Shown here piece after piece: positions 5,666-31,111 of a stretch of DNA of 31,111 nucleotides. The notes beneath the pieces were generated by a model. It was not told the origin of the DNA. It searched no databases and saw only the letters and a list, made by a program, of their open reading frames with translations. The stretch comes from Macrostomum lignano (lineage: Eukaryota). Position 1 is the stretch's first letter. Each line of letters opens with the position of its first letter. The stretch covers positions 1 through 31,111 of the forward strand of contig NIVC01001015.1 in NCBI GenBank assembly GCA_002269645.1, read 5' to 3'. The position numbers were made by a program, and so were the translations under genes.

Positions 5666-5911
5666 GTTTCGGTTCAATGTATTTTTTTCAATTATATGCA
5701 TAGCTCGTTTAGTCGGAAAAGCTGTGAAAAAGTACGAGTTTTTTTTAATTCGTTACAAAAAAACACTTAATTTTGAGCGCTAAATATAATAACGGTCAGC
5801 TTAAGATGTGTAAAATCATTTGTTTCTTTTTTCCAGGTATAATTTTTTTTGGTGATTAGGCAATGCACTTTAACGCGCGGTTGCCTAGCTCTCCCACGTC
5901 CGAAATTCGAG

Positions 5912-9593: not shown

Positions 9594-11498
9594 CTGTTCC
9601 TCTGGGAGATTTGGTTGATCTCGAGTCGTCCTCGTCTTCTTCTTAAGTCGATGTTTTTGCGTATTGGCGAATCAGGCAGCTTTTTTTAAATTGATGTATC
9701 CGTGTATGTTCGCTGGCCTAGTTTCTTCGAACTTTCGAACTTGTTTGGTAGCGGGGTTGCAGGCCGGAACGAGGAGGCGAGGGAAGGCAGTAAATTCTGG
9801 CAGTTTTTCAAGAGCCAACCCGAAATCTCGAAGGTTTTTATTGCGCCGCGCGATCAACTCCCCTCGAGGAGAGGAGAAGAAGGAAAAAATTATAGAAGAA
9901 ATAGAGCGGCAGAAGATGCGGATGTCATTCTCCTCCGCTTTTTATACGGACTGCAGCTTCGCCTGGGTCTGCTTCTCGCATTGGAATCGAATAGCGGAGA
10001 GAACCTGGGGCGAGTCTCCCGGGGTGTCCAAATAATGTGCTGCTTCCTGCTTGTGTTGCTGCTTGCTGGCCAGCTTCTTGAAGACTAGCCGACTGTGGGA
10101 AGGGGGGCGACTTCACATCCCGATCCCGTTGTTGGCGCAATAAAATATGATGGGGAAATTTGAGGGGGGGGGTAGAGTTATCCACCCTCTACAAGAACGA
10201 ATCCTGACCCCGGCGCGCTTCTCGCTCACTGCGCGGTCGAGTGCACGCTTGAATGGCTCTTCATCCAGAGTTTTGGAGTGCCGCTCCGGGAGCTAGCGAA
10301 GTCCAGGGAGTCGGGCCGCTGCGAAATCCGAGAATAGGGAGGGCATATAGCGAGAGATGGAAGGCCTCCAGGGGCGCCCCCCCCCCCCCGATTTTTCGAT
10401 TGGCACACGCGCGCAGCAAGATTGGAACAGGGGCGATGAAGACTCTCTCTACCAAAGGCGAGCCCAACCTGCCTAGTTGCTGCGGCCCCTGCGTCAGCCG
10501 CCCTGCCAATTCTCTGTCATCACTTTGCCCCGAGGGCCGCTTGGGAATAAGGGAATTAATCGTTCCGCGTCCCAGCAGGGGTGCGGCCGCCAAACTTGGT
10601 TGATGATCCCAATTTTTCTCAGCAACCCAATCGCCTCAGGCCGGTGCGCGCAGGTTAGCCCATTTTTTTCTTGTAATAATTCGATCGTCTGGCATCAAGA
10701 AGAGACCGTGCGGCAGCCGTTAGTTGATTTTCGCCCAACACCAGGGCGGGTTGGGGGGAAACATTGCGCCAGACTGGCCGCAACACAAATCCTAGCTATG
10801 CAATCGGGGAAAAGTGCAACGAGAACAAGCCCTGGCGCACACTTCCACCATCGGAGGACGTCACCGCGATTGTCTGTGAACGCCCGAAGACTCAGCTGAG
10901 TGCGCTTATAAAACAGCCACTATTTATATGTAGGTGCAGGACGGCCCCAGAAACCGGTCACGCCCAGCAACTAAAGGAGACATCTATCGGTGTAATTTAC
11001 AATTGTTCTTTGCTCCGCGATCTGTGCACTTGTACGGCCCCTTACGCTTGATTGACTTGCTTATTTTAATTTTGTGGTTCTCTCTCTCTCTAGCACAGAT
11101 TTTGAATCGTGAAACGTGTAGCCCTGCTCAGTCAGCCAAGCAGCCCGCTTTACCTTGTCAATTATGCATTGCAGGTTGAAGTTCTTGAGCTGCTTGCAAC
11201 TAGTAACAAAGAATGGATGATCTTTAATGTTTAATTAAACATCGATGTTTTTATATTGATCTCAGCTCCGTATAGCTGCGGTTTCGTTAGGCCTGAGTGA
11301 TTTTTACAATGTGAGCGTGTCGAGACGGCGAGTTGTGCCCCGTAAAACATTCTCTCATTAAAAAACAGTCTGGATCTGGAATCTTGATCTTGGCTATATA
11401 TATCTGGCACTATCGTTAAGAAGATACAACGCTGTGTAGAGCTGTGTTTGACTCTGTCTAAAGCTTATATAGTTTAGTTATACTCATAGTGCCCTACA

Positions 11499-12384: not shown

Positions 12385-13100
12385 GTGAGTCAGGATGGAT
12401 TGGGGCTGAGTCAGGGTGTATTAAAGTGAAGGTTGAAGGTAAGGTAAAGGTGAATGTTAAGGTGAGTCAGGATGAGTTAAGGTGAGTCAAGAGGAGTTAA
12501 GGTGAGTCAGAATGGGTTAAGGTGAGTCAGAATGGGTTAAGGTGATTCAGGATGATTTAAAGTGAGTCAGGATGCGTTAAGGTGATTCAGGATGATTTAA
12601 GGTGAGTCAGGATGGGTTAAGGTGAGTCAGGATGGGTTAAGGTGAGTCAGAGTGAGTTAAGGTGAGTCAGGATGAGTTAAGGTGAGTCAGAGTGAGTTAA
12701 GGTGAGTCAGGATGAGTTAAGGTGAGTCAGGATGGGTTAAGGTGAGTCAGGATGAGTTAAGGTGAGTCAGGATGGGTTAAGGTGAGTCAGGATGAGTTAA
12801 GGTGAGTCAGGATGGGTTAAGGTGAGTCAGGATGAGTTAAGGTGAGTCAGAGTGAGTTAAGGTGAGTCAGGATGAGTTAAGGTGAGTCAGGATGGGTTAA
12901 GGTGAGTCAGGATGAGTTAAGGTGAGTCAGGATGGGTTAAGGTGAGTCAGGATGAGTTAAGGTGAGTCAGGATGGGTTAAGGTGAGTCAGGATGAGTTAA
13001 GGTGAGTCAGAGTGAGTTAAGGTGAGTCAGGATGAGTTAAGGTGAGTCAGGATGGGTTAAGGTGAGTCAGGATGGGTTAAGGTGAGTCAGGATGAGTCCG
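12385..13100. repeat. 20 bp minisatellite downstream of the TAL stop codon
   Basis: 32 in-register units ggtgagtcaggatg(a/g)gttaa starting at 12461 through 13081, plus degenerate upstream copies. Confidence 0.95.
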
Positions 13101-13923: not shown

Positions 13924-15713
13924 TCACACTCGTCGCTTGATGCCGAAATCCTCGAAGTCCAGCATGGCGTCTTCCTCCTTGGAGACGTGCAGGATTCTTC
14001 GTTGCAGGCCGATGCTGGCCGGCTTAAAGTTCTCTCCGTCGTTGGCCTCCTTGATGGATTTGACGGCTTCCACGGTCTGAGGAATTTTTTCAATTGGTTT
14101 TGGTTGCATTTCGTAAAAAACCATAAACATTTAATGTCAGGTATACTCTACTGACAAAAGTAGAAATGAAAACATTTTTTCGAGAATTTTCGTAAAAATC
14201 TATAGATGTTTCATGCAAGAGATACTCTACTGAAGAAAGTAGAAATGGAAACATTTTTCGATAACTTTTTCTACCAACAGTAAACATAAAAGCATTTTAT
14301 GCATTTTAGGTTTTTGCATAGATCAAATTATGTGAGCTTTTTCTCACCCAGTCGAAGACGGCGAATGCGGCCGGACTCTGCAGGGCCATCTCGCGCCTGT
14401 CGATGCCGCTGAGAATCTGCTGACTGCGCGCGGCGATGCGCGGATCAACGCTGGTAGCGTCGAAGCCACCATTGGCGAGGCGTTCGACGCCCTTCAGCAG
14501 CGGCTGGCAGCGCTTCCATTTCTGGAGGGAATTCATTGAAATGGGCGCGCTTGTTGTCAGTGAGAGGCTTCATCACTGATTTGAAGAGGGAGAATCTGCA
14601 GTGCGCACTTCGATCTTAAACTAATTGCATTTCATTTGCTTCCCGAATTCCCTCCATTTCTCTACCGGAATCCCCTCCATTTCTCTACCGGAATTCCCTC
14701 CATTTCTCTACCGGAATCCCCTCCATTTCTCTACCGGAATCCCTCAATTTGTCTCCATGAATTCCCTCCATTTCTCTACCGGAATCCCTCCATTTCTCTC
14801 CATGAATTCCCTCAATTTCTCTACCAGAATTCCCTCCATTTCTCTACCGGAATTCCCTCCATTTCTCTACCGGAATCCCCTCCATTTCTCTACCGGAATC
14901 CCCTCCATTTCTCTACCGGAATTCCCTCCATTTCTCTACCGGAATCCCTCAATTTGTCTCCAGGAATTCCCTCCATTTCTCTACTGGAATCCCTCCATTT
15001 CTCTACTGGAACCCCTCCATTTCTCTACCGGAATCCCTCAATTTGTCTCCAGGAATTCCCTCCATTTCTCTACCGGAACCCCTCCATTTCTCTACTGGAA
15101 TTCCCTCCATTTCTCTACCGGAATTCCCTCCATTTCTCTACCGGAATCCCCTCCATTTTTCTACCGGAACCCCTCCATTTCTCTCCATGAATTCCCTCCA
15201 TTTCTCTACCGGAATTCCCTCCATTTCTCTACCGGAATCCCCTCCATTTTTCTACCGGAACTCCCTTCATCTACGCCTGGCCAAGTCCCAAGCTGCTGCT
15301 GCAGCCAGTCAAACGCTCACCCTGGTCCGTTTTTCATAGTTGCCAGCCAGCAGCAGCAGGGCCCGCACAGTTTTGTGCACCGACTCCACCGGTCGCTGGT
15401 AGGCCCGAAGCTCCAGCAGGCTGCGCGCTGTCATCATCGACTGCTGCTGTTGCTTCTTTTGCATGTCAACGCTGTTCAACTTCCGTTCGCGTTCGATCAG
15501 CTCGTCAGCTTCTTCCAGCTCTGAGCGCAGCATCAGCCGCTGATTGTCTGTCAGACTCTCCGACTTCACCTGCTCCACCAGCTGGGTCAGCCGGCCGACA
15601 CTGCGATACTTCTTCGATCGGCTGATGGCCGAGCGGAGGACTGCGGAGTATGAGCGGGTCTTGCTGCAGACAGACAGACAGACAGACAGACAGACGGACA
15701 GACAGACGGACAG

Positions 15714-15755
<42 letters not shown>

Positions 15756-15797
15756 ACAGACAGACAGACGGACAGACAGACGGGCAGACAGACGGGC

Positions 15798-15841
<44 letters not shown>

Positions 15842-18800
15842 GGGCAGACAGACGGGCAGACAGACGGGCAGACAGACGGGCAGACAGACGGGACAGACAG
15901 ACGACAGACAGACGGGCAGACAGACGGGCAGACAGACGGGCAGACAGACAGACAGACAGACGGGTAGACAGACGGGCAGACAGACGGGCAGACAGACGGG
16001 CAGACAGACGGGCAGACAGACGGACAGACAGACGGACAGACAGACGGACAGACAGACGGGCAGACAGACGGGCAGACAGACGGGCAGACAGACGGACAGA
16101 CAGACGGGCAGACAGACAGACAGACAGACGGACAGACAGACAGACAGACAGACGGGCAGACTCACTTTTCCGCTGCTCCAGAGCGTGCAGTGTCAGCTTG
16201 GCCTCCTTGAGCTTCTTCACCTCGCGCTCCTTCAGCATGATCCGCTCGGCAGCGGCCTCGGTCTCGGAGATGGCATCGCCAATTCTGTCGGCGTTGCGCG
16301 CTTGGCCAGCAGGGCGGAGTCGAGCTCGGCAAAGCGCAGCTTCAGCTGCTCCCGCCGCGGCGAAGTCTTGGAACCTCCGGCGCCCTGCTGTTTGGCCGTT
16401 GGCTGGCCTCTGCCCTGCGATTGTTCGATAGAGAAAAAAGCCATCAGCTGAGATTTTAACTATAAAAGCTTTTCTCGTAAAACTGTCACTCACGGTAAAG
16501 CTACTCACAGTAGTCACTGCTCTACCGGGCGACACACCACCAGAAGGCCGAGGCGATCTGACGGGCGGAAGCGTTTTCTGCTTCGAAGAATGAGAAGCAG
16601 CAACTGGCTGCTCCTGTGGCTGCTTTGTTGGCTTCCTTTGATCTTTAGCGGCTTGTGCCTCGTCAGCTGCGAAAGCTGCCGGTTGAGCCTCCCCGGCTGG
16701 GGTAGCTTCCGGTTGAGCCTCCTCGGCTGGAGCAGCTTCCGGTTGAGTCTCCTCGGCTGGGGCAGCATCCGGTTGAGCCTCCTCGGCTGGGGTAGCTTCC
16801 GGTTGAGCCTCCTCGGCTGGGGTAGCTTCCGGTTGAGCCTCCTCGGCTTGAGCGGCTTCCGATTGAGTCTCCTCGGCTGGGGCAGCTTCCGGTTGAGCTT
16901 CATCAGTCACTGGCTGCGCATCATCGGCTGGGGTAGCTTCCGGTTGAGCCTCCTCGGCTTGAGCGGCTTCCGGTTGAGTCTCCTCGGCTGGGGCAGCTTC
17001 CGGTTGAGCCTCCTCGGCTTGAGCGGCTTCCGGTTGAGTCTCCTCGGCTGGGGCAGCTTCCGGTTGAGCTTCATCAGCCACTGGCTGCGCATCATCGGCT
17101 GGGGTAGCTTCCGGTTGAGCCTCCTCGGCTGGGGCAGCTTTTGGTTGAGCTTCATCAGCCACTGGCTGTGCATCATCGACTGGAGCATCTTCCGGTTGAG
17201 CCTCATTTTTTGGGATAGCTTCCGGTTGAGCCTCATCAACCACTGGCTGCGCATCCTCGGCTGAAGCAGCTTCCGGTTGAGCCTCGGCTTGAGCGGCTTC
17301 CGGTTGAGTCTCCTCGGCTGGGGCAGCTTCCGGTTGAGCTTCATCAGTCACTCGCTGCGCATCATCGGCTGGGGTAGCTTCCGGTTGAGCCTCATCAACC
17401 ACTGGCTGCGCATCCTCGGCTGAAGCAGCTTCCAGTTGAGCCTCCTCGGCTGGGGCAGCTTCCGGTTGAGCATCGTCGGCTGGGGCAGCTTCCGGTTGAG
17501 CCTCATCTTTTGGGGTAACTTCCGGTTGAGCCTCATCAGCCACTGGCTGCGCATCCTCGGCTGGGGTAGCTTCCGGTTGAGCCTCATCAGCCACTGGCTG
17601 CGCATCCTCGGCTGGGGTAGCTTCCGGTTGAGCCTCATCAGCCACTGGCTGCGCATCCTCGGCTGGGGCGGCTTCCAGTTGAGCCTTCTCGGCTGGTGCA
17701 GCTTCCGGTTGTGCCTCATCAGCCACTGGCTGCGCACCCTTGGCTTGGGTAGCTTCCGGTAGAGCCTCCTCAGCTGGGCCAGCTTCTGGTTGAGCCTCAT
17801 CGGCTGGGGCAGTTTCCGGTTGAGCCTCCTCGGTAGAGACAGCTTCCGGTTTAGCCTCATCGGCAGAGGCAGCTTCTGGTTTAGCCTCATCGGTAGAGGC
17901 AGATTCCGGTTGAGCCTCATCGGTAGAGGCAGCTTCCGGTTTAGCCTCAGCGGCAGAGGCAGCTTCCTGTTTAGCCTCATCGGTAGAGGCAGCTTCCGGT
18001 TGAACTTCATAGACTTGGGCAGCTTTCGCTTGATCCTCACCAGCCACTGGCTGCGCATCCTCGGCTGGGGCAGCTTCCGGTTGACCATCATTAGCGGAGG
18101 CAGCTTCTGGTTTAGGCTCATCGGTTGAGGCAGTTTTCGTTGAGCCTCATCAGCAACTGTCTGCGCATCCTCGGCTGGGGCAGCTTCCGGTTTAGCTTCT
18201 TCGGTTGAGGCATCTTCTAGTTTAGCCTCCTTGGTCAAGGCAGCTTCCGGTTGAACCTCATCAGCTTGTGAAGCTTCTTGCGCTTGAGCCTCATCGGCTT
18301 GAGCAGCTTCTTCTGGTTGAGCGTCATCGGCTTGAGCAGCTTCTTCTGGTTGAGCGTCATCGGCTTGAGCAGCTTCTGGTTGAGCCTCATCGGCTTGAGC
18401 AGCTTCTGGTTGAGCCTCTCGGCTGGAGCAGCTTCCTTTTGAGCATCATCGGATTGAGCAGCTTCTTCTGGTTGATCGTCATCGGCTTGAGCAGCTTCAG
18501 ATTGAGCCTCATCGGCTTGAGCAGCTTCCTTTTGAGCATCATCGGGTTGTGCAGCTTCCTTTTGAGCATCATCGGATTGAGCAGCTTCTTCTGGTTGAGC
18601 CTCATCGGCTTGAGCAGCTTCCGGTTGAGCCTCACTGGCTTGAGCAGCTTCCGGTTGAGCCTCACTGGCTTGAGCAGCTTCCGGTTGAGCCTCATCGGCT
18701 GGAGCAGCTTCCTTTTGAGCATCATCGGATTGAGCAGCTTCTTCTGGTTGATCGTCATCGGCTTGAGCAGCTTCCTTTTGAGCATCATCGGATTGAGCAG

Positions 18801-21039
18801 CTTCTTCTGGTTGATCGTCATCGGCTTGAGCAGCTTCCTTTTGAGCATCATCGGATTGAGCAGCTTCTTCTGGTTGATCGTCATCGGCTTGAGCAGCTTC
18901 AGATTGAGCCTCATCGGCTGGAGCAGCTTCCTTTTGAGCATCATCGGGTTGTGCAGCTTCCTTTTGAGCATCATCGGATTGAGCAGCTTCTTCTGGTTGA
19001 GCCTCATCGGCTTGAGCAGCTTCCGGTTGAGCCTCACTGGCTTGAGCAGCTTCCGGTTGAGCCTCACTGGCTTGAGCAGCTTCCGGTTGAGCCTCATCGG
19101 CTGGAGCAGCTTCCTTTTGAGCATCATCGATTGAGCAGCTTCTTCTGGTTGATCGTCATCGGCTTGAGCAGCTTCCTTTTGAGCATCATCGGATTGAGCA
19201 GCTTCTTCTGGTTGATCGTCATCGGCTTGAGCAGCTTCAGATTGAGCCTCATCGGCTTGAGCAGCTTCCTTTTGAGCATCATCGGGTTGTGCAGCTTCCT
19301 TTTGAGCATCATCGGATTGAGCAGCTTCTTTTGGTTGAGCCTCATCGGCTTGAGCAGCTTCCGGTTGAGCCTCACTGGCTTGAGCAGCTTCCGGTTGAGC
19401 CTCATCGGCTTGAGCAGCTTCCGGTTGAGCCTCATCGGCTTGAGCAGCTTCCGGTTGAGCTTCATCGGCTTGAGCAGCTTCCGGTTGAGCATCATTGGCT
19501 TGAGCAGCTTTTTCTGGTTGAGCGTCATCGGCTTGAGCAGCTTCCGGTTGAGCCTCATTGGCTTGAGCAGCTTCAGGTTGAGCCTCATCGGCTTGAGCAG
19601 CTTCCTTTTGAGCATCATCGGCTTGTGAAGCTTCCTTTTGAGCGTCATCGGCTTGAGCAGCTTCCGGTTGAGCCTCATTGGCTTGAGCAGCTTCCTTTTG
19701 ACCATCATCGGATTGAGCAGCTTCTTCTGGTTGAGTGTCATCGCTTTGAGCAGCTTCTTTTTGAGCGCCATCGGCTTCAACAGCTTCCTGTTGAGCGTCA
19801 TCGGCTGGGGCAGCTTCCTTTTGAGCCTCATCGGCTTGAACAGCTTCCTGTTGAGCGTCATCGGCTGGGGCAGCTTCGTTTTGAGCCTCATCGGCTTGAA
19901 CAGCTTCCTGTTGAGCGTCGTCGGCTGGGGCAGTATCAGGTTGAGCGTCATCAGCTGGAGCAGCTTCCTTTTGAGCATCATCGGATTGAACAGCTTCCGG
20001 TTGAGCCTCATTAGCTTGATCAGCTTCCGGTTGAGCCTCATTAGCTTGAGCATCTTCAGCTTGGGAATCATTCTCTTGTGCGTTGTGCTCTTGATAAGCT
20101 TCTACTTTAGCTTCATCAGCTTGAGCAGCTTCTTTTCGCTGAGCGTCATCGCCTTGAGCAGCTTTCGGTTGAGCATCGTCGGCTGGAGCAGCTTCCGGTT
20201 GAGCATTGTCGGCTGGAGCAGCTTCTGGTTGAGCATCGTCGGCTGGAGCAGCTTTTGGTTGAGCCTCATCGGCTTGAGCAGCTTCTAATTGCTTAGTCCC
20301 TCCAAGGGGCTCCGCAGCTGGTTCAGGTGCCGTGTCCTGTCTTACTGACACTCTGTCGCCTTCACTACGGCCGTTCTTAGGGCTCTGTTGACGGATGAAA
20401 AAGTTTGGAAGTGACAAATATGTTTATAGTCGAGTACATCGATAGGCTCGTACTATGGAGTAGACAAGTAGATTTGATTGGCTGTTATTATGCTCGTAAA
20501 TAGTGCAAAAATATAACGTCGGTATCAAATGCGTATGAAATAATAAAGCGGTGATGTAAACAGGCCTTCCTTAAAGTGTGAGCAGATCGCTGACTTTCGC
20601 GCCACCCTGTGTGAGCGCGTGTGCATGAGTGCGTGCCTGCGTGCAACATTGGCGAGCTCGTATGTGCTCAGGAGTGAGCGGAGACGATGTCGCTGAAGGC
20701 ATGTTACCGGGGTGCCCACGGACCTTTTGTACTCGTAATAATAATTATTATTATTATTATGCTAGTAATTCATTTTTTGGTAACTCTGTAAGACTCAGTA
20801 ATGAAAGACTCAGTTATGAAATGTTTTGAGCACAAGTATTCAACTTCATACGGTTATAATTGTGCAAATTTGGCTACAGAATTCACGCTAGCCAGCAGGT
20901 AACCTATTGAAGTTAGTGTTGAAGCGCTTGCAAACTTGCTATGTCGGTAATGCATTTTTCAGAGAAAACCAGCAATGAAAGCGAAGCAACTCACCGCCGC
21001 CCGCTGCTCAGCAGCCAACTCAGTCGAGGCTTCTGTCAT
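13924..21039 (-). CDS. Acidic-repeat protein with C-terminal dynein-stalk MTBD-like module (6 exons, ~1,600 aa after frameshift correction)
   Basis: Model: 21039-20995 (MTEASTELAAEQRAA|GTGAGT), 20384-16509 (giant E/A/Q/P/D repeat exon), 16414-16166, 15663-15321 (LLELRAYQRPVESVHKTVRALLLLAGNYEKRTR|GTGAGC), 14521-14348 (KWKRCQPLL...SPAAFAVFDW|GTGAGA), 14076-13924 (TVEAVKSI...FKPA...). Needs single-base insertions near 19129, 18418, 18139, 16295 and probably at the 16166/15663 junction. Confidence 0.72.
14640..15262. repeat. 20/21 bp intronic minisatellite
   Basis: Unit ccctccatttctctaccggaat(t)c in the intron 15320-14522; explains ORFs 14625-15524 and 14636-15190. Confidence 0.92.
15667..16160. 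repeat. (CAGA)n / (CAGACAGACGGG)n compound microsatellite
   Basis: Pure cagaca/gacgg/gacggg units bounded on the minus strand by GTGAGT and TCTGCAG. Confidence 0.95.
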
Positions 21040-21240
21040 CTCGCAACTTCGGTGTGACTGACCCTACTGGCCCGCGTTTTTAACTTTTTGACTCAAACGA
21101 AAGTCTGTTACGAGCTAAAGCTAACCAACTCGCTCCGAGTCTGAGACCGCCGGAATTTATCAGCTGTCACCCACTTTATTGTCTCTCTCTCTCTTCACTA
21201 TGACAACGGCGGGCGTTCTTCATTTATCTTTAGGACTGGA

Positions 21241-21242
<2 letters not shown>

Positions 21243-21272
<30 letters not shown>
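21243..21272. repeat. (CT)n dinucleotide microsatellite
   Basis: About 15 tandem TC units. Confidence 0.8.
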
Positions 21273-21273
<1 letters not shown>

Positions 21274-21473
21274 GCTGAGATTAGACAACTAAACTAACAA
21301 GTTCAGACCCAGCAAAGAATCGACAGCAACACAGTTTGTTCGCAAGTGCAGGTTAATAGAGAGAAAGACACGATTAAGAGACCAAAAAAACACACGCAGC
21401 AATGCTTGCTTGCGTTCACTCCTTGCCAACCAGCGACTCGAACGTCGAGCAGGGGGGAGGGGGAGAGTTGGCG

Positions 21474-21487
21474 GTTTCCATAACAAC
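21474..21487. promoter_or_regulatory. Candidate RFX X-box
   Basis: GTTTCCATAACAAC fits the X-box consensus RTHNYYWTRRNRAC at all 14 positions; lies ~435 nt upstream of the ATG at 21039. Confidence 0.5.
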
Positions 21488-22249
21488 CGGTGTGAAGCGG
21501 CGAGTGACGTTTCTGTGTCATAATCATATCTTTGCCAATCTAGCCTAGCAGTACCTCTCCCCCAGAGTGCATTAGGGTGCGAGACCGCGCTGTTTCATAA
21601 TGAATATCTGGCAGTTTCTGCTGGGCAAAAACGGCTTACATGTATTCTGGCAGTCAAAGTTCGCTTGATAAATATTTGTTCTTGGAAAATATTCTTTAGA
21701 ATAAAAACTGGAACGTTGCTACAAAGCGTTGCGCTTCTCTAAGTAAACTTGGTTTGTTTTCAGATGTTGCTGGTGTACGAGTATAGTAAATGGCTTTAGA
21801 ATGTATTATATATTTTCTAACATGAAGCAGTATGACTATACCGGTAGGTAAGGATAAAGCAGTAATTTTATTCGGTTATGCATGTTCATTCAACAGTGTC
21901 TTGGTGGTTGATTTACAATAATTCTATACATGTAGGTTCGATCTTTTATGCGGTCAGAGGGGTCGTGGGCAACGATGCCCAATAGTTATTAATCACTTAT
22001 AATAAACAACTAAATAATAATATTATTAAAGTATTAATTTACTAAGTTATTATATACTATATTTATTATAACAAATATTAATAATAACTTCATATGAATG
22101 TTAATAACAAGATAATGCTGTATACTAAAAGAATACTTAATTATAATAAAAGTAATATTTGATACAAAAGATATCTAATAATAAGTTGTCATGACTACAG
22201 ATAGAATTAACGCAGTACCGCGGACCCCTTAAAGACATTGTATACAGTT

Positions 22250-25200
22250 CTATAATTTGACATTGTTGGACCTCGTCTTGCCAATTCCGGTCCGTAATTT
22301 TGAACTGGCAACGGAGGCGCCGCTAACGCTGCCAGTCTCCGAGTCGGAATTGTACTTGGCGTCCTCCGCAGGCGTCACGCCAAGGATGCGGGCCTGCTGT
22401 CGTACGCCGGCCGGCTTGAACCGGTCCGGCGGGTGGCTCGCTCTATTGTTGCAACAGTTTTCACGCCCTGTGGATGTAAATATAATATTAAGGCGTATAT
22501 CAACTGTCTTTGCTAAGGCCCGTGCCGATCTTGAACTTGAAAATGCTGACAATAAATATTCCAAATATTTAATCATCCTTTGGTAAAGAAACAATAATTT
22601 TCTGACTTTCTGAATACTAAACTAACAAACCCGGAGAAAATTCACGAATCCTGAATTAACAAACGCTGAGAAAATTCAGAAACCTTAAGTTATCAAACTC
22701 CGAGACATTTCACGAATCCTAAATTAACTACCGTGAAGGAAATTCAAATTCACGAATCCTACATTAACAAACCCGGAAAAACTCACGAATCTTGAATTTA
22801 AAAAATCCAGAGGAATTAACAAACACGAAAGTAACGTCTTGAAGCTGTGAAGCCTTCATTCCTTACCCATTCATAGAAAGCAAAGGCGGCAGCACTGCGC
22901 TGTTCAACCTCTTGAGCGTCGATGCCGTCTAGGATCTGCTTGCTTCTGGCAGCGATGCGCGGATCGACGCGGGTCACGTCCAGCGCGTCCATGTCGTGCA
23001 GGATGGTGCGGAGCAGCGGCTGGCAGCGCTTCCATTTCTGTCTTTTGGGAAACGGGGTGGATATAGTTTCAAACCGGTTCGTTTGGGGCAGTACATAATA
23101 ATTTGTTTACCGAGAAGCAGAGAAGAACACATGCAAAGGCGTTAAATTGACAAGTCAAGTTTAGAGGCCTGATCTCTTTAGGTCTGTAAGAACTTGCATG
23201 AGGATATGTAACACATTTTGGATGCAGGATCTGTATGAGCTAAGATTCGTAGGACTTTAAGAATCTGTATGACCTGTAGGGTTTCGTACGGTCTGAAGGA
23301 TCTGTGTGACCTGTAGGATTCACAGGACCTTCAGGATTTGTATGACTTGTAGGATTCTTAGGACTCGAAGGATCTGTTTTACCTGTAGGATTTCGTAGAA
23401 CTCGAAGGATCTGTTGACCTGTAGGATTCGTTAGGACTCGAAGAATCTGTATGACCTGTAGGATTTCATAGGACTCGAAGGATCTGTATGACCTGTAGGA
23501 TTTCGTACGGTCTGAGGATCTGCGTGACCTGTAGGATTTCGTACGGTCTGAGGATCTGTGTGACCTGTAGGATTTCGTACGGTCTGAGGATCTGTATGAC
23601 CTGTAGGATTTCGTACGGTCTGAGGAGCTGTGTGACCTGTAGGATTAGTAGCACTCGAAGGATCTGTATGACCTGTAGGATTCGTTAGGACTCGAAGGAT
23701 CTGTTGACCTGTAGGATTCGTTAGGACTCGAAGGATCTGTTTGACCTGTAGGATTCGTTAGGACTCGAAGGATCTGTTTGACCTGTAGGATTCGTTAGGA
23801 CTCGAAGGAACTGTTTGACCTGTAGGATTCGTTAGGACTCGAAGGAACTGTTTGACCTGTAGGATTCGTTAGGACTCGAAGGATCTGTTTGACCTTGTGC
23901 AATCATGCCCTTTCTCGCCCTCCTGCCCCGCCCCAACCCTCCAGTCTGCCCCACCCCTCCAATCAATAATCAATGCGTACGCCGATCACGCCACCCCCCC
24001 ACCTCCCCTGCTGTACCGTACATTTGTTCTTAAGTTATATTCATGTACGCGTAGGACCAATGAAAAATATATAGTCGCTGTCTGGAGGGCAGACTCCTTC
24101 CCTTGCGCGCGTTGGGCCGCCTCCGTTGGCTATTGAATAAAACGACTCGTCGATCTACCATAAAAAGTGCACGGCGAACTGCATCGGCTACGGTGTGTAA
24201 GTTCGTGTTCGCGAGTTATTGTCCTTTTTCTGCTTCTCCCTAGGGCGCGGGACGGGAGCTCTGACTGGGGACCTGGGGGTCGCAGCTTCCCGACAGGTTA
24301 AAGCTGTAGGCGTTGCTCCGGAGGACGGGCTCACAACAACTGGTGCCGTGACCAGGATTCCAGTTAGGGTTTCCGTAGGATTTCCACGGTCTGAGGATCT
24401 GCGTGACCTGTAGGATTTCGTACGGTCTGAGGGATCTGTATGACCTGTATGATTAGTAGCACTCGAAGGATCTGTATGACCTGTAGGATTCGTTAGGACT
24501 CGAAGGATCTGTTTGACCTGTAGGATTTCTTAGGATCTGAGTGACTCTAAATTAGTATCTAAAGAATCAGTCGAATCCCTCGATTTCTTAAAGGACCAAA
24601 AGTGAACAACAGTAAAAACTGGCCGCCAACTCGCCCTAGTCCGCTTCTCGTAGTGTCCGGCCAGCAGCAGCACAGCCTGCACGGCACCGTGGACCGCGTC
24701 CTGCGGACTGGAGTACCGTCTGAGCTCCGTGAGGCTGCGCGAGTTCGCTCCCAGCCGGTGCCGCGGCTGCCTCGCGCGCCGATTGTAACGCCACATCGCC
24801 TGTCGAGCTGCCGTCGCCTCCGCCGATACCAGCTTGGCCGCAACCGACGTCTTTGACATCGACGTCGCCGCGGTTGAGGTCAGGCCGAGATCGTCGAGCT
24901 CGCTTAGTAGGCGACGAAGCCGATGAACATCCGTCTGTTCGACAGCGCGCTGAAGATCTACGAGCGTACATGTAAAAGCGTAGAACGTTTCAGAAGTGTC
25001 CCGAATCTATGATTATTATCCAATTATAGGTAGCTAAATACGCCACGCAAAAATATACGTGGAAAGCTAAATTTACCTACTGAATCCAACTGCACGATTA
25101 ATTTAAGCTGAGTTGCTAACAGGAACCAATTAGCTAAAGGACCCAATGGCGTACGCAGGAATTTTAATTGGACTGAGCGCCCCAATTTTTCAGTGTCTTG

Positions 25201-28200
25201 GTTGACACCTCAATCTTCTAGGTGGGCGCCCCTGTCTTCTGGTGGGCGCCCTTGTCTCTTGGTGGGCGTCCCTGTCTTTTGGTGGATGTCCCTGTCTTCT
25301 GGTGGGCGCCCTTGTCTCTTGGTGGGCGTCCCTGTCTTTTGGTGGATGTCCCTGTCTATTGGTGGGCGCCCCTGTCTCTTGGTGGGCGCCCCTGTCTCTT
25401 AGTGGGCGCCCCTGTCTCTTGGTGGGCGTCCCTGTCTTTTGGTGGGCATCCCTGTCTCTTGGTGGGCGCACCTGTCTCTTGGTGGGCGTCCCTGTCTCTT
25501 GGTGGGCGCCCCTGTCTCTTGGTAGGCGTTAATCAACGTTAATTTAAAAGTGTTGAAATCTATATATTTCTAAACAGAAGAAATACCAAGTCATTGTTCC
25601 GACTGTCAAACGACGCTGACATTTTTTCTGTTAGAAGGTGGGATTTTTCCTAAAAGCGCTAGATTATTCAAAACAACCCCTGGACGCCTCAGTACAGCCT
25701 TGCCAAGCCTCCAAATTTCATCACATGTCCCTGCACCAAACTCTGACTTCGTTGATCACTGACCTTTACCCATGGGAAACTTCTGGACCTTCAACAGATG
25801 GCACCAGGTTACTCTACTGGACACTCTATTTCGAATTTCTCTAGTTTCGCTGAGCAAACCTCAACTGCTGGGCTCATTCACTCACCAACTTTGAGATCGA
25901 TAGCAGCCAGCACTAAGCACGCCTTGCCAGCCAGCTTCCGTGACACCGCCGCTCCCTGCTGATCCTTCAATGCCGCTTCTATCATGTCCGAATTCGCTGC
26001 CGCTATCGCCTCTTCCAGACGCTGACACGCCGCGGTGTCGGCCGCAGCAGCCGCGGCAGATGCAGCTTCCTCGTCGCCCTCGCCCTCGCCGTCGACTCGC
26101 CATCGCCGCCAGCGTCGCTGTCGCCGTTGCTCAATCAGCCTTACTGTCTCCAGTCGACTCTGACGTCGAGCTAATCGATTTGCCGCCTCATCCAGGAAGT
26201 CGCTGGCTCCGATCTCCGAAGTGGTTATCGACCCGAAAACTCTGACAGGATGGCAGCGGAGCACACGCCATTCGCCGTCGCCATTCCGGGCCCCGGCTGA
26301 GCGCAACAGTTTTAGCAAATAGTTGCCAGGCAGGCAAAATCGACAAGAAATTGAGCTGCCATCGACAGACAAAGTTGCAACGGCTCCCTCTGCCGGCACC
26401 AAATCAGCCTCGGCCTCGGCCATCTCGCCGCCATGTCGCCGTCGTTCCCAACCTCGAGGGCGCCAGGCCACGCGGAGCAGCTCGACACGTTCAACTGTCT
26501 CCTTTACCGTATCGACAGGCACAGACAGTTCCGCGGCAGTTGTCGCTTTGTACGGCTCGCCAAAGACGTCTTTGGACGCGTCTGACGCTGCCGACTCCAC
26601 CAGGCGCTGCCAGTTCGGCTGCGGCTGCTGCCGCCAGGCGGCTCCGTCGGCGTCGTCGGCGCCGCAGTCGGCTGCCACCAGGAACTGACAGACGGGCCGG
26701 TCGCGCAGACGCAACACCAGAGCGAGTTGGCCGCCGCCGGCCGGTGCGTAAAAATGTACACCGAGTCTGGACAGGTAGGCCGTGCCGGGAGGGGCCAGAC
26801 GATCACCCTGCTGGTAGACACGGCAGGTGAGCCTCAGGTAGCCATCACCGTCAATGTGCATCAATGCGACGGCCGCTTCACCATTTGATGCCGATAGTTC
26901 ACCGTTGGCAATGTCGCAGCCGAGCTCTAGACTGCCACCTGTAGCGGTGTTTCTCGTTGATATGTAACTGTGATTTCGTAGTGTGGTCTTCATTAAGGAT
27001 ACTCTCTAAAGTATTGTGAGAATTGTGGTCTAATTGGTACTGATCTAGCTGTAGGAACTGTGGCCTAATTGGTACTGATCTAGCTGTGGGAACTGTGGTC
27101 TAATTGGTACTGATCTAGCTGTAGGAACTGTGGTCTAATTGGTACTGATCTAGCTGTGGGAACTGTGGCCTAATTGGTACTGATCTAGCTGTGGGAACTG
27201 TGGTCTAATTGGTACTGATCTAGCTGTAGGAACTGTGGTCTAATTGGTACTGATCTAGCTGTGGGAACTGTGGTCTAATTGGTACTGACCTAGCTGTAGG
27301 AACTGTGGTCTAATTGATACTGATCTAGCTGTGGGAACTGTGGTCTAATTGGTACTGATCTAGCTGTAGGAACTGTGGTCCAATTGGTACTGATCTAGCT
27401 GTGGGAACTGTGGCCTAATTGGTACTGATCTAGCTGTGGGAACTGTGTGGTCTAATTGGTACTGATCTAGCTGTGGGAACTGTGTGGTCTAATTGGTACT
27501 GATCTAGCTGTAAGGACTGTGGTCTAATTGGTACTGATCTAGCTGTGGGAACTGTGTGGTCTAATTGGTACTGATCTAGCTGTAAGGACTGTGGTCTAAT
27601 TGGTACTGATCTAGCTGTGGGAACTGTGTGGTCTAATTGGTACTGATCTAGCTGTGGGAACTGTGGTCTAATTGTAAGGTCAAAAGGGTCAAACCTGAAC
27701 TGTCACTCCTGGGCGGCCCAAACTCGGACAGCTCGCCAGACGGGAACCCGCAACCGCCGTCGCCGCTCCCGCACCCTACTGGGCAATGCAGCGCAAAGCC
27801 AACAAAGCAATCGTCATATTGATAGTCATCGTCTTCCGTTAACAGCCGAATCTCCAAGTAGAATTTTCCTGGCCAAGGCGGCTCCACCTTGAATTTCAAC
27901 ACGCCGTCTCGATCGGTGCGAATTGGCCGGCTGACGCTGCAGTCGCCCGGCTGACGGCCGTCGATGGTGTTCGACAGACAGCGAAGGACGCTCGTGTAGC
28001 GACAGGGCAGGTGACGCCTTTGTTGAGTCTCTTGGAGCTCCAACTCGAGCAGCTCGCCCGGCCGGCCAAGGACAACATTCCACGGCCAGTTTAGGACGGC
28101 TAATCGGCCAGAGTGGCGCTCGAACTCCCCAGCCGTGCGCCGGCGAGGTAAACGGGCATCCGGTCGAACTCCGACTTGGTGAGCGGTCGGGCGAGCAGCT

Positions 28201-29073
28201 GCCAGACGGCTGGTGAATCGGTACTTTTATCGTCGCTATTAGCATCAAGCTGGCAGGGCAGGTGGGTGATGACGAACTGCTCCGGGTCGGTCAGGAAGAA
28301 GAACTCCCTGGAGTCTGTGTCGGCCGCCATCGCCGCCCAGCCAATGTCAACCAGTCGCCATTCGCCTCGCACAAAACAGGCAAACCAGCTGCCGCCCACC
28401 GGGGTGCGAAAGCCGGGGGCCAAGCCGGCACCTTTCTTGTACCCGAGAACTCGTTGGAACGGAATGCCAGCCTCGCTGCGTGGAGATGCGAAAGTTGGTT
28501 TTCTACTTAGTCAGATGATCAAACAGCTATTTTAAGCATTTCCACAATCTTAAACTGAAGTCACGTTAATTACCAACCTGAGCAGTTTGGCAAACACCTC
28601 AGAGTGTCTGTCCTCTCCCTTGGAGTCAGTCGATTCCGCCATCCGTCGCAGAGTCCTATAGACCGTCAGTTGAAGTTCCGACTCCGTCTTAACGAGTCTC
28701 CCAGGCCTGTTGCTGACTGCGCACACAAACCCGAACGCCGCTCTCAGTCGTTCGAGGTCGCCGCTGCATCGTCTGTACAGACGTTGGCACAAGCTTGCCC
28801 AGCTGTCATCTGGCTGCGGCAACTCCTCGGCTGACTGAGCGTCAATTGTCACAATGTCCGCTGGCTGTTTTGAAACTGCAGTAGCAGCTCAGCCTTGGTG
28901 CGTCGCGGCGGGAACGGAGGCGGTGGTGGCTGCCGGACGTCGTCAAGCTGCTGCTGGTCCTCTCTGGGCGGCTGTCCCAGCTTGCGCTGGCTTGTAGCCA
29001 GGCTCTGCGGCGTCGGGTACTGGCCTGACTGCAGCCGCTCACGAATAGAACTCGAGTGGTCTAATGCATAGTC
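22250..29073 (-). CDS. KY/hillarin-like transglutaminase-like (probably inactive) protein with beta-sandwich repeats and a C-terminal dynein-stalk MTBD-like module; 5' incomplete, ~1,000 aa modelled
   Basis: Model: 29073-28578, 28475-27695, ~26938(or 27001)-25886, 24957-24635, 23037-22867, 22467-22250. KY-family motifs VFAKLLSEAGIPFQRVLGYKKGAG, SWFACFVRGEWRLVDIGW, FFFLTDPEQFVITHLP, WQLLARPLTKSEF, FKVEPPWPGKFYLEI. Needs single-base insertions near 28870, 28128 and 22432. Confidence 0.75.
23225..23895. repeat. 36-37 bp intronic minisatellite (array 1)
   Basis: Units gacctgtaggattcgttaggactcgaaggatctgttt (37) and gacctgtaggatttcgtacggtctgaggatctgtgt (36). Confidence 0.9.
24375..24532. repeat. 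36-37 bp intronic minisatellite (array 2, same family)
   Basis: Same two unit variants as 23225-23895, separated from it by ~480 bp of non-repeat DNA. Confidence 0.85.
25215..25525. repeat. 20 bp intronic minisatellite
   Basis: Unit ggtgggcg(c/t)ccctgtctctt, about 15 copies. Confidence 0.92.
27025..27672. repeat. 35-37 bp intronic minisatellite
   Basis: Unit aactgtggtctaattggtactgatctagctgtggg, about 18 copies, filling nearly the whole intron. Confidence 0.93.
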
Positions 29074-29379: not shown

Positions 29380-30700
29380 AATGAACCAGAGGCGTTCTCT
29401 TGCGACGAACCAGAGACGTTCACTCGAGACGAACCAGAGACATTCACTCGAAACGAAATCAGAGACGTTCACTCGAGACGAACCAGAGAAATTCACTCGA
29501 AACGAAATCAGAGACGTTCACTCGAGACGAACCAGAGACATTCACTCGAGACGAACCAGAGACGTTCACTCGAGACGAACCAGAGACATTCACTCGTAAC
29601 GAAATCAGAGACGTTCACTCGAGACGAACCAGAGACATTCACTCGAAACGAAATCAGAGACGTTCACTCGAGACGAACCAGAGACATTCACTCGAAACGA
29701 AATCAGAGACGTTCACTCGAGACGAACCAGAGACATTCACTCGAGACGAACCAGAGACGTTCACTCGAGACGAACCAGAGAAATTCACTCGAGATGAAAT
29801 CAGAAACGTTCACTCGAGACAAACAGAGACGTTCCCTCGAGACAAACCAGAGACATTCACTCGTAACGAAATCAGAGACGTTCACTCGAGACGAACCAGA
29901 GACATTCACTCGAAACGAAATCAGAGACGTTCACTCGAGACGAACCAGAGACATTCACTCGAGATAAAATCAGAGACGTTCACTTGAGACGAAATCAGAG
30001 ACGTTCACCCGAGACGAACAAGACGATCGATCACCAGACGTTCACTCGAGACGATCACCAGACGTTCACTTGAGACGAAATCAGAGACGTTCACCCGAGA
30101 CGAACAAGACGATCGATCACCAGACGTTCACTCGAGACGATCACCAGACGTTCACTCAAGACGAAATCAGAGACGTTCACGTACTCGAGACGAACCAGAC
30201 GATCGATCACCAGACGTTCACTCGAGACGATCACCAGACGTTCACTCAAGACGAAATCAGAGACGTTCACGTACTCGAGACGAACCAGACGATCGATCAC
30301 CAGACGTTCACTCGAGACGATCACCAGACGTTCACTCAAGACGAAATCAGAGACGTTCACGTACTCGAGACGAACCAGACGATCGATCACCAGACGTTCA
30401 CTCGAGACGATCACCAGACGTTCACTCAAGACGAAATCAGAGACGTTCACGTACTCGAGACGAACCAGACGATCGATCACCAGACGTTCATTCGAGACGA
30501 TCACCAGACGTTCACTCAAGACGAAATCAGAGACGTTCACGTACTCGAGACGAACCAGACGATCGATCACCAGACGTTCACTCGAGACGATCACCAGACG
30601 TTCACTCGAGACGATCACCAGGCGTTCACTCAAGACGAAATCAGACACGTTCACTCGAGACGACACTCAAGACGAAATCAGACACGTTCACTCGAGACGA
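29380..30700. repeat. 24/25 bp satellite grading into a 93 bp higher-order repeat
   Basis: gagacgaaccagagacgttcactc and gaaacgaaatcagagacgttcactc monomers to ~30010, then a 93-bp period (seen as the 31-aa periodicity of ORF 30070-30780). Confidence 0.92.
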
Positions 30701-30935: not shown

Positions 30936-31111
30936 AGCAAGCATCCTGCAGATAGCAAGCATCCACCCAGATAGCAAGCATCCCCCAGATAGCAAGCATC
31001 CACCCAGATAGCAAGCATCCCCCAGATAGCAAGCATCCACCCAGATAGCAAGCATCCCCAGATAGCAAGCATCCCAGATAGCAAGCATCCCCCAGATAGC
31101 AAGCATCCACC
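30936..31111. repeat. 19 bp minisatellite running off the window end
   Basis: Unit gcaagcatcc(a/c)cccagata. Confidence 0.9.

What the first reader, a model, noticed from the sequence alone, without database searches (positions are those of the whole stretch)
13924..24957. Two tandem paralogs carry a dynein-stalk microtubule-binding-domain-like module with no motor
Both minus-strand genes end in the same ~110-aa module. Gene 6: LTELRRYSSPQDAVHGAVQAVLLLAGHYEKRTR|KWKRCQPLL..LDVTRVDP..IL..EV..RSAAAFAFYEW|GV. Gene 5: LLELRAYQRPVESVHKTVRALLLLAGNYEKRTR|KWKRCQPLL..FDATSVDP..IL..SPAAFAVFDW|TV. By eye this follows the dynein heavy-chain stalk-tip pattern (ElksY..PP..V..V.eAv.lLlg...W...k.ll...l..fD...I...V...S.Aa..l..Wv). 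No AAA ring or long stalk coiled coil is encoded. The two introns in the module sit at identical positions and phase 0 (seen). The N-termini are unrelated (pseudo-transglutaminase versus acidic repeats), so the module looks like a shuffled microtubule-docking unit (inference). Similar module-bearing KY-like proteins may already exist unannotated in other lophotrochozoans.
Basis: partly seen in the sequence, partly recalled or inferred. Interest (0 to 1): 0.8.

Follow-up and report, generated by a model that had tools for sequence, protein, structure and literature searches.

The report
Motor-less dynein microtubule-binding domain genes
Two neighbouring flatworm (Macrostomum lignano) genes end in a small helical domain that is a true relative of the microtubule-gripping tip of the dynein motor but has no motor attached, and they belong to a widespread, unstudied animal/chytrid family that probably tethers non-motor proteins to microtubules.

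Summary
Two minus-strand genes each end in the same three-exon module, with two introns at identical positions in phase 0 and no dynein motor. [quoted passage not shown] Single-sequence Pfam finds nothing. A flatworm-only profile matches a dynein-only profile (hhalign 93%, E 3.4e-7). Family profiles hit only dynein MTBDs in the PDB (E 5.8e-13, or 1.4e-9 with a strict KY-only profile). AlphaFold models (pLDDT 91-92) retrieve almost only dynein stalk/MTBD chains by Foldseek, though with weak E-values.

The shared unit is about 220 aa, not 110: a 36-residue lead-in helix, the six-helix core, a short exit helix and a family-specific C-terminal motif. The family has 203 or more clusters in molluscs, annelids, flatworms, amphioxus, a tunicate and chytrids. 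It usually sits behind a KY/hillarin-like transglutaminase-like core and Ig-like_KY repeats.

Databases already auto-label members: gene 5 is UniProt "MT domain-containing protein". I found no paper. Microtubule binding is inferred, not shown, because the checked dynein contact residues are only partly kept. As assembled, both genes carry single-base frame defects.

The parts
15321..15664 (-). Gene 5 module exon A. It encodes two short helices, a 36-residue CC1-like lead-in helix and MTBD helices H1-H2, and ends ...YEKRTR| with a GT donor.
   Evidence: Translation and splice sites. Identical to public model P0002 from ...NQRLML onward. AF2 helices 2-19, 23-34, 39-74, 79-86 and 93-105.
14348..14521 (-). 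Gene 5 module exon B. It runs from KWKRCQPLL to ...FAVFDW and covers MTBD helices H3-H6. It is bounded by phase-0 introns.
   Evidence: Aligns to dynein H3-H6.
13924..14076 (-). Gene 5 module exon C. It encodes a short CC2-like continuation of H6 and the family-specific C-terminal extension (FKPASIGLQRRILHVSKEEDAMLDFEDFG), then the TGA stop.
   Evidence: The PA....Q+.I(L/F)G motif is conserved in annelid and mollusc members. pLDDT is about 95-98 over most of it.
16175..16414 (-). Gene 5 exon 3, a coiled-coil-like linker (GRGQPT...LEQRK). As assembled it is one base short relative to P0002 (AKLRNADR).
   Evidence: Reading against the P0002 sequence. Splice phases.
16509..20384 (-). Gene 5 exon 2, about 1290 codons of acidic low-complexity repeat. 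The unit is about 10 aa (30 nt), e.g. AQPEAAQADE. Composition is A 31%, E 17%, Q 14%, D 11%, P 10%. Three single-base frame shifts lie near 19130, 18413 and 18120.
   Evidence: TRF period 30/60 with about 115 copies. Frame tracking and composition.
20995..21039 (-). Gene 5 putative first coding exon (MTEASTELAAEQRAA, GT donor).
   Evidence: Inferred, with no transcript evidence.
24635..24957 (-). Gene 6 module exon A. It runs from (D)LQRAVEQTD... to ...HYEKRTR| and starts in phase 1 like gene 5 exon A. The donor is a non-canonical GC.
   Evidence: tblastn with P0001, P0003, P0005 and P0017.
22867..23037 (-). Gene 6 module exon B, from KWKRCQPLL to ...FAFYEW, bounded by phase-0 introns.
22250..22467 (-). 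Gene 6 module exon C. As assembled, the frame shifts at a CCC run near 22432, giving a stop at 22377-22375. In the conserved frame it continues FKPAGVRQQARILGVTPAEDA... to a TAG at 22252-22250.
   Evidence: The near-identical public copy P0020 has CCCC and an intact frame.
28100..28852 (-). Gene 6 KY/hillarin-like transglutaminase-like core, two exons at about 28852-28578 and 28475-28100. It lacks the catalytic Cys and His by alignment.
   Evidence: tblastn E 1e-10 to 3e-10 to KY-like proteins P0031 and P0008, and E 2e-9 to P0005. Alignment.
25878..28043 (-). Gene 6 middle part. It holds an Ig-like_KY-like ORF (28043-27648; weak, E 0.015) and a 371-aa ORF (26993-25878) that ends in helical L..AI...d...L repeats. 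Exon limits were not resolved.

Best explanation
SHOWN. The window is Macrostomum lignano DNA. It holds two tandem, old paralogs whose last three exons encode a ~220-aa helical unit. Its core of about 105 aa is a homolog of the dynein heavy-chain microtubule-binding domain (helices H1-H6). The core is carried on a short helical stem: a 36-residue CC1-like helix going in and a ~20-residue helix coming out. A family-specific C-terminal extension follows. There is no AAA+ ring and no long stalk.

Gene 6 has the family's usual architecture: a KY/hillarin-like transglutaminase-like core that appears catalytically dead, Ig-like_KY repeats, helical linkers, then the MTBD-like domain. Gene 5 keeps only the linker and module behind a ~1290-residue acidic low-complexity region.

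INFERRED. The module acts as a passive, ATP-independent docking foot on the microtubule lattice. It would presumably sit at the dynein site at the tubulin intradimer interface, with affinity fixed rather than switched, because there is no long stalk to change helix registry. On this reading gene 6 would be a microtubule-anchored KY-like scaffold. Gene 5 would be a MAP-like protein with a long acidic projection domain. Gene 5 most likely arose by duplication of the 3' part of a KY-like neighbour followed by gain of a repeat exon.
For: Homology:
- hhalign of the flatworm-only alignment against a dynein-only alignment gives 93%, E 3.4e-7, over 93 columns.
- The 44-sequence family profile hits 74 PDB sequences, and all 60 listed are dynein heavy chains aligned at their MTBD, best 5.8e-13. 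One 4583-aa entry is labelled radial spoke head protein 9 but aligns like DNAH10.
- The strict 10-sequence profile of window and KY-verified proteins gives the same result, best 1.4e-9.
- The 3-sequence profile already aligned to Tetrahymena ODA-beta residues 3239-3377.
- PF12777 is hit by 16 of 74 members, at model positions of about 100-207 of 344 only.

Fold:
- AF2 pLDDT is 91.3 and 92.3.
- Foldseek ranks dynein MTBD/stalk chains first. Mouse MTBD on microtubules (6rzb_C) gives TM 0.59/0.64 and rmsd 3.4 A over 125 columns.

Family and selection:
- There are 203 representative clusters and no ~4000-aa dyneins among the top 150.
- KY architecture is confirmed.
- The taxa are listed.
- dN/dS is 0.38.
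- A second M. lignano locus again has tandem module-bearing genes.

Microtubule binding (indirect only):
- The module core is net basic: +8 in gene 5, +3 in gene 6, family median +4, mouse MTBD +2.
- The family keeps basic residues at or next to dynein contact residues K3299, R3342 and R3382 in 50-60% of members.
- The flatworm copies carry a basic cluster EKRTRKWKR at the H2-H3 junction (contact residues from PMC6629372, PMC6125590, PMC4230729).
Against: - No experiment or co-localisation supports microtubule binding.
- In the window's two modules the loop holding the R3342 equivalent is deleted, and the R3382 equivalent is L (gene 5) or Q (gene 6).
- In many family members the H2-H3 loop is acidic rather than basic.
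- Pfam does not recognise the window's own proteins.
- Foldseek E-values are only 6e-3 to 2.
- I could not inspect model coordinates, so how the stem and C-terminal extension pack is unknown.
- As assembled, both genes have frame defects, so these particular copies might not be functional.
- The gene 5/gene 6 boundary and the 5' exons rest on sequence reading only.
Confidence: 0.6

Rival explanations
1. The domain is a true MTBD homolog but has been re-purposed. In KY-like proteins it binds something other than the microtubule lattice, such as another cytoskeletal polymer, a partner protein or free tubulin, or it is only a structural cap for the helical linker.
For: Two of the dynein contact positions I could check are lost in the window's modules: the R3342 loop is deleted and R3382 is replaced by L or Q. 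The most conserved family positions (E, Y, P, G, W, S.GAA..W) look like core rather than surface residues. From general knowledge, vertebrate KY and leech/fly hillarin are linked to Z-disc/filamin and to axon hillock/septin contexts rather than to microtubules. I did not check this here.
Against: The family keeps net positive charge and basic residues near three dynein contact sites in about half of its members. The whole H1-H6 bundle is retained with a lead-in helix like CC1. No alternative ligand is suggested by any result.
Confidence: 0.3
2. The copies in this window are decaying or non-functional duplicates. The family is real, but these two genes no longer make the proteins described.
For: - Gene 6 has a GC donor and a 1-nt frame shift in its last exon.
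- Gene 5 has three 1-nt shifts in the repeat exon and one in exon 3 relative to P0002.
- M. lignano carries many near-identical copies.
Against: All defects are single-base indels, one of them in a C homopolymer. Sequence downstream of each shift stays conserved in the shifted frame, which is typical of long-read assembly errors or very recent changes. dN/dS is 0.38. The public model P0002 reads exon 3 intact, and P0020 reads gene 6's last exon intact. GC-AG introns are a known minority class.
Confidence: 0.15
3. The resemblance to the dynein MTBD is a chance or convergent similarity of a small all-helical bundle.
For: Pfam gives no direct hit for the window's proteins. No Foldseek E-value is at or below 1e-3. 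Identity to dynein is only about 16-19%.
Against: Three independent profile tests are significant, collinear over H1-H6, and hit only dynein. Foldseek ranks dynein chains first, well ahead of any other helical fold. Intermediate family members cross or approach the Pfam MT threshold.
Confidence: 0.03

Closest known systems
Dynein heavy-chain microtubule-binding domain (Pfam PF12777 'MT', central part; e.g. PDB 3ERR, 6RZB, 6KJN)
   Same: It has the same six-helix core in the same order, with the signature E..(S/Y)..PP..V...(M/V).A..LLLG...W....L...FD...(I/V)....S.(A/G)A....W. A helix enters (CC1-like) and a helix leaves (CC2-like). The core is net basic.
   Different: There is no AAA+ ring. The stalk is reduced to about 36 residues in and about 20 residues out. 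A family-specific C-terminal extension (PA....Q+.I(L/F)G) replaces CC2. The domain sits at the C-terminus of non-motor proteins. Some dynein contact residues are not kept in the flatworm copies. No nucleotide-driven registry switch is possible.
KY (kyphoscoliosis peptidase) / hillarin family: Transglut_core plus Ig-like_KY repeats
   Same: Gene 6 and most family members have this N-terminal architecture. NCBI names scallop members 'hillarin-like' and an amphioxus member 'KY'.
   Different: From memory, vertebrate KY has no MTBD-like tail. I did not test this. The top 150 representatives show no obvious vertebrate member, but only about 30 clusters were looked up by name. In the aligned MTBD-bearing members the catalytic Cys and His positions are substituted (by eye).
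Classical structural MAPs with a projection domain (MAP2/tau/MAP1 type); functional analogy only
   Same: Gene 5 combines a very long, acidic, low-complexity region with a small C-terminal putative microtubule-binding unit.
   Different: There is no sequence or fold relationship. The binding unit here is a folded MTBD homolog, not tau-type repeats. Microtubule binding is untested.
Existing automatic database labels: UniProt A0A1I8GMU8 'MT domain-containing protein' (gene 5 itself) and NCBI XP_067667795 'cytoplasmic dynein 2 heavy chain 1-like' (356 aa, Haliotis asinina)
   Same: They show that the MTBD similarity in motor-less proteins has already been picked up by pipelines.
   Different: They are names only. 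I found no description, family definition or experiment in the searchable literature.

Membership tests
Dynein MTBD (Pfam PF12777 MT, MTBD core) | Direct match of the protein to the curated Pfam model | tested here: not met
   Neither window module hits PF12777 at E <= 10, and P0002 gives no hit at E <= 0.01. Other family members hit it at 14-26 bits against a cut-off of 24. One (P0043, 26.0 bits) passes.
Dynein MTBD (Pfam PF12777 MT, MTBD core) | Significant, collinear profile similarity to bona fide dynein MTBDs | tested here: met
   hhalign of flatworm-only against dynein-only alignments gives 93%, E 3.4e-7. Family profiles against the PDB hit only dynein MTBDs, at 5.8e-13 and 1.4e-9.
Dynein MTBD (Pfam PF12777 MT, MTBD core) | Six-helix MTBD fold | tested here: met
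   AF2 pLDDT is 91-92. Foldseek against the PDB gives dynein chains as 14/15 and 20/20 top hits, with TM 0.64 (target-normalised) to 6rzb_C and rmsd 3.4 A. E-values are weak, at 6e-3 or higher.
Dynein MTBD (Pfam PF12777 MT, MTBD core) | Conserved microtubule-contact residues (mouse K3298/K3299, R3342, E3378/R3382) | tested here: inconclusive
   The family is basic at or next to these columns in 50-60% of members. In the window's modules R is kept next to K3299, the R3342 loop is deleted, and R3382 is L or Q.
Dynein MTBD (Pfam PF12777 MT, MTBD core) | Binds microtubules | not testable with these tools
   Needs co-sedimentation, TIRF, cryo-EM or localisation.
Dynein heavy chain (motor) | AAA+ ring (six AAA modules), linker, and a ~15-nm antiparallel coiled-coil stalk carrying the MTBD | tested here: not met
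   Gene 5 is an acidic repeat plus linker plus module. Gene 6 is KY-like plus module. Family proteins are 100-2300 aa. PF12777 is matched only at positions of about 100-207. The lead-in helix is 36 residues and the exit helix about 20.
KY / hillarin-like (gene 6) | Transglutaminase-like core followed by Ig-like_KY domains | tested here: met
   tblastn of KY-like proteins P0031 and P0008 to 28471-28163 gives E 1e-10 to 3e-10, and P0005 gives E 2e-9. Ig-like_KY is only weak on one ORF (E 0.015, below the cut-off). Homologs with the same C-terminal module have both domains above threshold.
KY / hillarin-like (gene 6) | Catalytic Cys-His-Asp triad of transglutaminase-like peptidases | tested here: inconclusive
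   In the MAFFT alignment, gene 6 has H at the expected Cys position and the homologs have H or Y. None has His two residues before the conserved W. The reference motif came from memory, not from a curated alignment.

The most novel reading that the evidence does not exclude
Free-standing dynein-MTBD domains define an unrecognised class of microtubule-associated proteins in many invertebrates, invertebrate chordates and chytrids. They would occupy the dynein footprint on tubulin constitutively. They could therefore anchor KY-like scaffolds to microtubules or cilia and compete with, or gate, dynein binding. They would also provide a natural 'stalk-less' MTBD for testing how much of dynein's affinity switch lies in the domain itself. 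Less likely, they descend from the free module that dynein originally captured.
Probability: 0.2. Interest if true: 0.8.

Novelty: new variant of a known kind. Interest (0 to 1): 0.6.

Why it matters
The dynein MTBD is normally discussed as a part found only at the tip of the dynein stalk. Here it appears in a conserved family of at least 203 clusters at 50% identity, spanning several animal phyla and chytrid fungi. In this family the same domain sits on non-motor proteins under purifying selection.

If the domain still binds microtubules, three things follow:
- It adds a new type of MAP.
- It links the poorly understood KY/hillarin scaffolds to the microtubule or ciliary cytoskeleton.
- It offers a simple natural system for studying MTBD-tubulin recognition without the registry-coupled stalk.

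It also bears on how the MTBD moved between genes. M. lignano has transgenesis and RNAi, so the question can be tested there. The value is tempered because annotation pipelines already flag the similarity and the function remains unproven.

Tried and rejected
- Single-sequence Pfam and PDB searches of the window's modules gave nothing useful.
- The word-indexed homolog search found only one relative, and 13 when given the profile. The exhaustive representative search was needed.
- I worried that short metagenomic dynein fragments might have contaminated the 44-sequence profile. A strict profile built only from window and KY-verified proteins gave the same dynein-only hit list. A flatworm-only versus dynein-only hhalign was also significant.
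- I considered a microtubule-tethered tubulin-modifying peptidase, by analogy with vasohibin, a transglutaminase-like peptidase. This seems unlikely because the Cys and His positions appear substituted across the aligned MTBD-bearing KY-like proteins.
- Remnant of a dynein gene: rejected on gene structure, family architecture and dN/dS.
- Exon shuffling on the basis of the two internal phase-0 introns: these lie inside the unit and do not argue either way. The unit's first exon starts in phase 1 in both genes.
- The Foldseek hit to 7jtk_C (radial spoke 1, rank 3) disappeared with the longer model. I could not identify that chain.
- Literature searches for KY/hillarin with dynein, 'MTBD-like', 'MT domain-containing protein' and Macrostomum with kyphoscoliosis found nothing relevant.

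Full report
WHAT IS THERE

The window is eukaryotic, with GT-AG introns packed with minisatellites. Reading the minus strand between 13924 and 24957 confirms the finding as written.

Gene 5 ends in three exons: 15664-15321, 14521-14348 and 14076-13924. Gene 6 ends in three exons: 24957-24635, 23037-22867 and 22467-22250. They encode the quoted peptides. Both internal introns lie at the same codon boundaries, after YEKRTR and after (D/E)W, in phase 0. The first of the three exons begins in phase 1 in both genes.

The C-terminal 162 residues I spliced for gene 5 are identical to a public protein, P0002 = UniRef100_A0A1I8GMU8 of Macrostomum lignano. This identifies the organism and independently supports the junctions. 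A third copy (P0001, 58% identical) on another M. lignano contig has the same two intron positions. That contig again carries two module-bearing genes in tandem, one with a transglutaminase-like core.

The two window modules are 52.5% identical, with dN 0.40, dS 1.06 and dN/dS 0.38 over 139 codons. They are old duplicates under constraint.

WHAT THE N-TERMINI ARE

Gene 6 upstream exons (about 28852-28578 and 28475-28100) match the transglutaminase-like core of KY-like proteins at E about 1e-10. One ORF weakly matches Ig-like_KY.

Gene 5 starts at an ATG at 21039. It continues with a 3.9-kb exon (20384-16509) of about 115 copies of a 30-nt unit encoding an acidic A/E/Q/D/P-rich repeat. A short coiled-coil-like exon follows, then the module. 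No AAA+ domain is present anywhere. The other genes found in the window are a serine carboxypeptidase and a PAN-domain gene.

IS IT A DYNEIN MTBD?

Direct searches fail. Pfam gives no hit at E <= 10 and phmmer against the PDB finds nothing meaningful. A three-sequence flatworm profile already aligns end to end with residues 3239-3377 of Tetrahymena outer-arm dynein beta, which is its MTBD, but at E 0.13.

The same profile searched against 1.84 billion representatives finds 203 proteins at E <= 1e-3. They are 100-2300 aa long, with the module usually at the C-terminus, and no dynein-sized protein is among the best 150. Of 74 scanned, 28 carry Ig-like_KY, 19 carry Transglut_core, and 16 individually hit Pfam PF12777 'Microtubule-binding stalk of dynein motor'. 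Those PF12777 hits cover only model positions of about 100-207 of 344, the globular MTBD part. Most fall below the 24-bit cut-off.

Three profile tests then give significant results:
- A 44-sequence family profile headed by the window's modules hits 74 PDB sequences. All 60 listed are dynein heavy chains aligned at the MTBD, best E 5.8e-13.
- A strict 10-sequence profile was built as a control against contamination by dynein fragments. It uses only the window's modules, P0001 and proteins with verified KY domains. It gives the same dynein-only list, best E 1.4e-9.
- The flatworm-only alignment was compared by hhalign with a dynein-only alignment: mouse DYNC1H1, bovine DNAH6, yeast, and Tetrahymena ODA-beta. 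The mouse stretch was written from memory and confirmed identical to PDB chains; the other three were taken from the outputs. This gives 93% probability, E 3.4e-7, over 93 columns spanning H1-H6.

STRUCTURE

AlphaFold2 on the 162-aa gene 5 module gives pLDDT 91.3 and pTM 0.85. On the 222-aa exon A-C product it gives pLDDT 92.3 and pTM 0.77.

The longer model has these elements:
- two short helices (2-19, 23-34)
- a 36-residue helix (39-74) leading into H1
- the MTBD helices
- a 20-residue H6/exit helix (164-183)
- two further short helices (194-200, 205-215), formed by the conserved C-terminal extension

Foldseek against the PDB returns dynein stalk/MTBD chains as 14 of the top 15 hits for the short model and as all of the top 20 for the long model. 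The best compact superposition is on the microtubule-bound mouse MTBD, 6rzb_C, with TM 0.59/0.64 and rmsd 3.4 A over 125 columns. No E-value is better than 6e-3.

The fold assignment is therefore specific but statistically modest on its own. It is convincing together with the profile results. The statement 'no long stalk' is right. 'No stalk' would be too strong, because a five-heptad CC1-like helix is retained.

THE FAMILY

Named members come from these groups:
- molluscs: Patella, Lottia, Nucella, Ruditapes, Argopecten, Pecten, Pinctada, Potamilus, Haliotis, Batillaria
- annelids: Helobdella, Owenia
- the flatworm M. lignano
- amphioxus
- a tunicate: Phallusia
- two chytrid fungi

The typical architecture is Transglut_core, then 2-7 Ig-like_KY domains, then helical linkers, then the MTBD-like domain. 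Some members, including gene 5, the chytrid proteins and an amphioxus 'mucin-like' protein, have other N-termini. The module is therefore found in more than one context.

Many members share a C-terminal motif, PA....Q(K/R).I(F/L)G, after the exit helix. It has no counterpart in dynein.

In an alignment of the transglutaminase-like cores, gene 6 and all eight MTBD-bearing homologs lack Cys and His at the expected catalytic positions. The reference motif came from memory, so I mark this provisional.

HOW IT PROBABLY WORKS

Shown: this is a dynein-MTBD homolog on a short stem, at the C-terminus of non-motor proteins, conserved and under purifying selection.

Inferred: it acts as a passive microtubule-docking foot.

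Indirect support comes from charge. The core is net basic: gene 5 +8, gene 6 +3, family median +4, mouse MTBD +2. The family keeps basic residues at or adjacent to the columns of dynein contact residues in 50-60% of members. These residues are K3299, R3342 and R3382, taken from PMC6629372, PMC6125590 and PMC4230729. Numbering was checked through.

Against this, the window's modules have deleted the loop carrying the R3342 equivalent. They have L or Q at the R3382 position. Instead they carry a flatworm-specific basic cluster, EKRTRKWKR, at the H2-H3 junction.

Without a long coiled coil and an ATPase there can be no registry-driven affinity switch, so binding, if any, should be constitutive. 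Gene 5's layout recalls structural MAPs, by analogy only: a huge acidic disordered region followed by a small folded binding unit. The main rival is that the domain has been re-purposed for another ligand. I give microtubule docking roughly 0.55-0.6 and re-purposing about 0.3.

STATE OF THESE COPIES

As assembled, gene 6 has two defects:
- a GC donor at its first module intron
- a CCC run near 22432 that is one base shorter than in the near-identical public copy P0020, which truncates the protein at 22377-22375

As assembled, gene 5 also has defects:
- three single-base shifts in the repeat exon, near 19130, 18413 and 18120
- one missing base in exon 3 relative to P0002

Coding sequence stays conserved after each shift. 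I therefore favour assembly indels or very recent lesions, but cannot decide between them.

NOVELTY

Pipelines already label members. UniProt names gene 5 itself 'MT domain-containing protein', and NCBI names a 356-aa abalone protein 'cytoplasmic dynein 2 heavy chain 1-like'. Six literature searches found no description of a motor-less dynein MTBD or of KY/hillarin proteins carrying one. The library does not cover subscription journals.

I rate it a new variant of a known kind: a real and fairly surprising domain context that is uncharacterised rather than undiscovered.

VERDICT

- The microtubule-docking function is plausible but untested.
- Interest is 0.6.

Noticed in passing
window 16509-20384 (-): The gene 5 acidic repeat exon has about 115 copies of a 30-nt unit. 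The acidic reading frame switches three times through single-base indels near 19130, 18413 and 18120, with net change zero. Reading straight through in one frame meets stops from 18389 on. The alternative open frame gives a basic KLLKPMRLN repeat, and this is the frame the public model P0002 translates at its N-terminus.
   Followed up: partly
window 22432 and 24634 (-): Gene 6 has a CCC run where the public copy P0020 has CCCC, which shifts the frame of the last exon. Its first module intron has a non-canonical GC donor (AGG|gcgagt). UniProt names that garbled public model 'Transposase', which looks like a mis-annotation.
   Followed up: partly
window 28100-28852 (-) and homologs P0005, P0008, P0017, P0022, P0031, P0064, P0065, P0069: The transglutaminase-like cores of gene 6 and of all aligned MTBD-bearing KY-like proteins have H or Y in place of the catalytic Cys and lack the His. 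The Asp is often kept. The whole subfamily may be pseudo-enzymes.
   Followed up: partly
L001 (M. lignano NIVC01002652.1) 3-158, 885-1049, 4082-7839, 9974-11059: A second M. lignano locus repeats the arrangement. The C-terminal module exons of one gene are followed by a KY-like gene whose last exons encode P0001. P0001 is annotated as a separate partial gene, but it is probably the 3' end of that KY-like gene.
   Followed up: partly
family-wide; window 13924-14030 and 22250-22420 (-): A conserved C-terminal motif, (F/K)PA....Q(K/R).I(L/F)G, followed by an acidic stretch (EED..LD(F/W).D.G in flatworms), lies after the MTBD-like core. It is predicted helical with high confidence and has no counterpart in dynein.
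   Followed up: partly
window introns: 14645-15270, 15667-16161, 23226-23895, 25217-25528, 27015-27674; also 1267-1902, 2385-3067, 3744-4153, 5203-5666, 12456-13097, 29383-30614, 30936-31111: Nearly every intron and intergenic stretch holds its own minisatellite, with periods of 12-180 nt and 85-98% matches. Together they make up a large share of the window. The homologous introns of genes 5 and 6 carry unrelated repeats.
   Followed up: no
window 8109-9593 (-) and 5912-6736 (-): Two unrelated neighbouring genes are present. One ORF is a serine carboxypeptidase (Peptidase_S10, E 2.6e-96) and one has a PAN/apple domain (E 6.9e-07).
   Followed up: no
Foldseek result, rank 3: Chain C of the Chlamydomonas radial spoke 1 structure (7jtk_C) matched the short module model about as well as dynein chains did (E 0.07, prob 1.00, TMq 0.51). 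It was absent with the longer model. I could not identify the chain or tell whether it holds an MTBD-like bundle.
   Followed up: partly
P0042 (1229 aa, ENA metagenome assembly): One representative matched the profile in 11 separate stretches, over profile positions of about 70-109. This suggests a protein built of repeats of part of the module.
   Followed up: no
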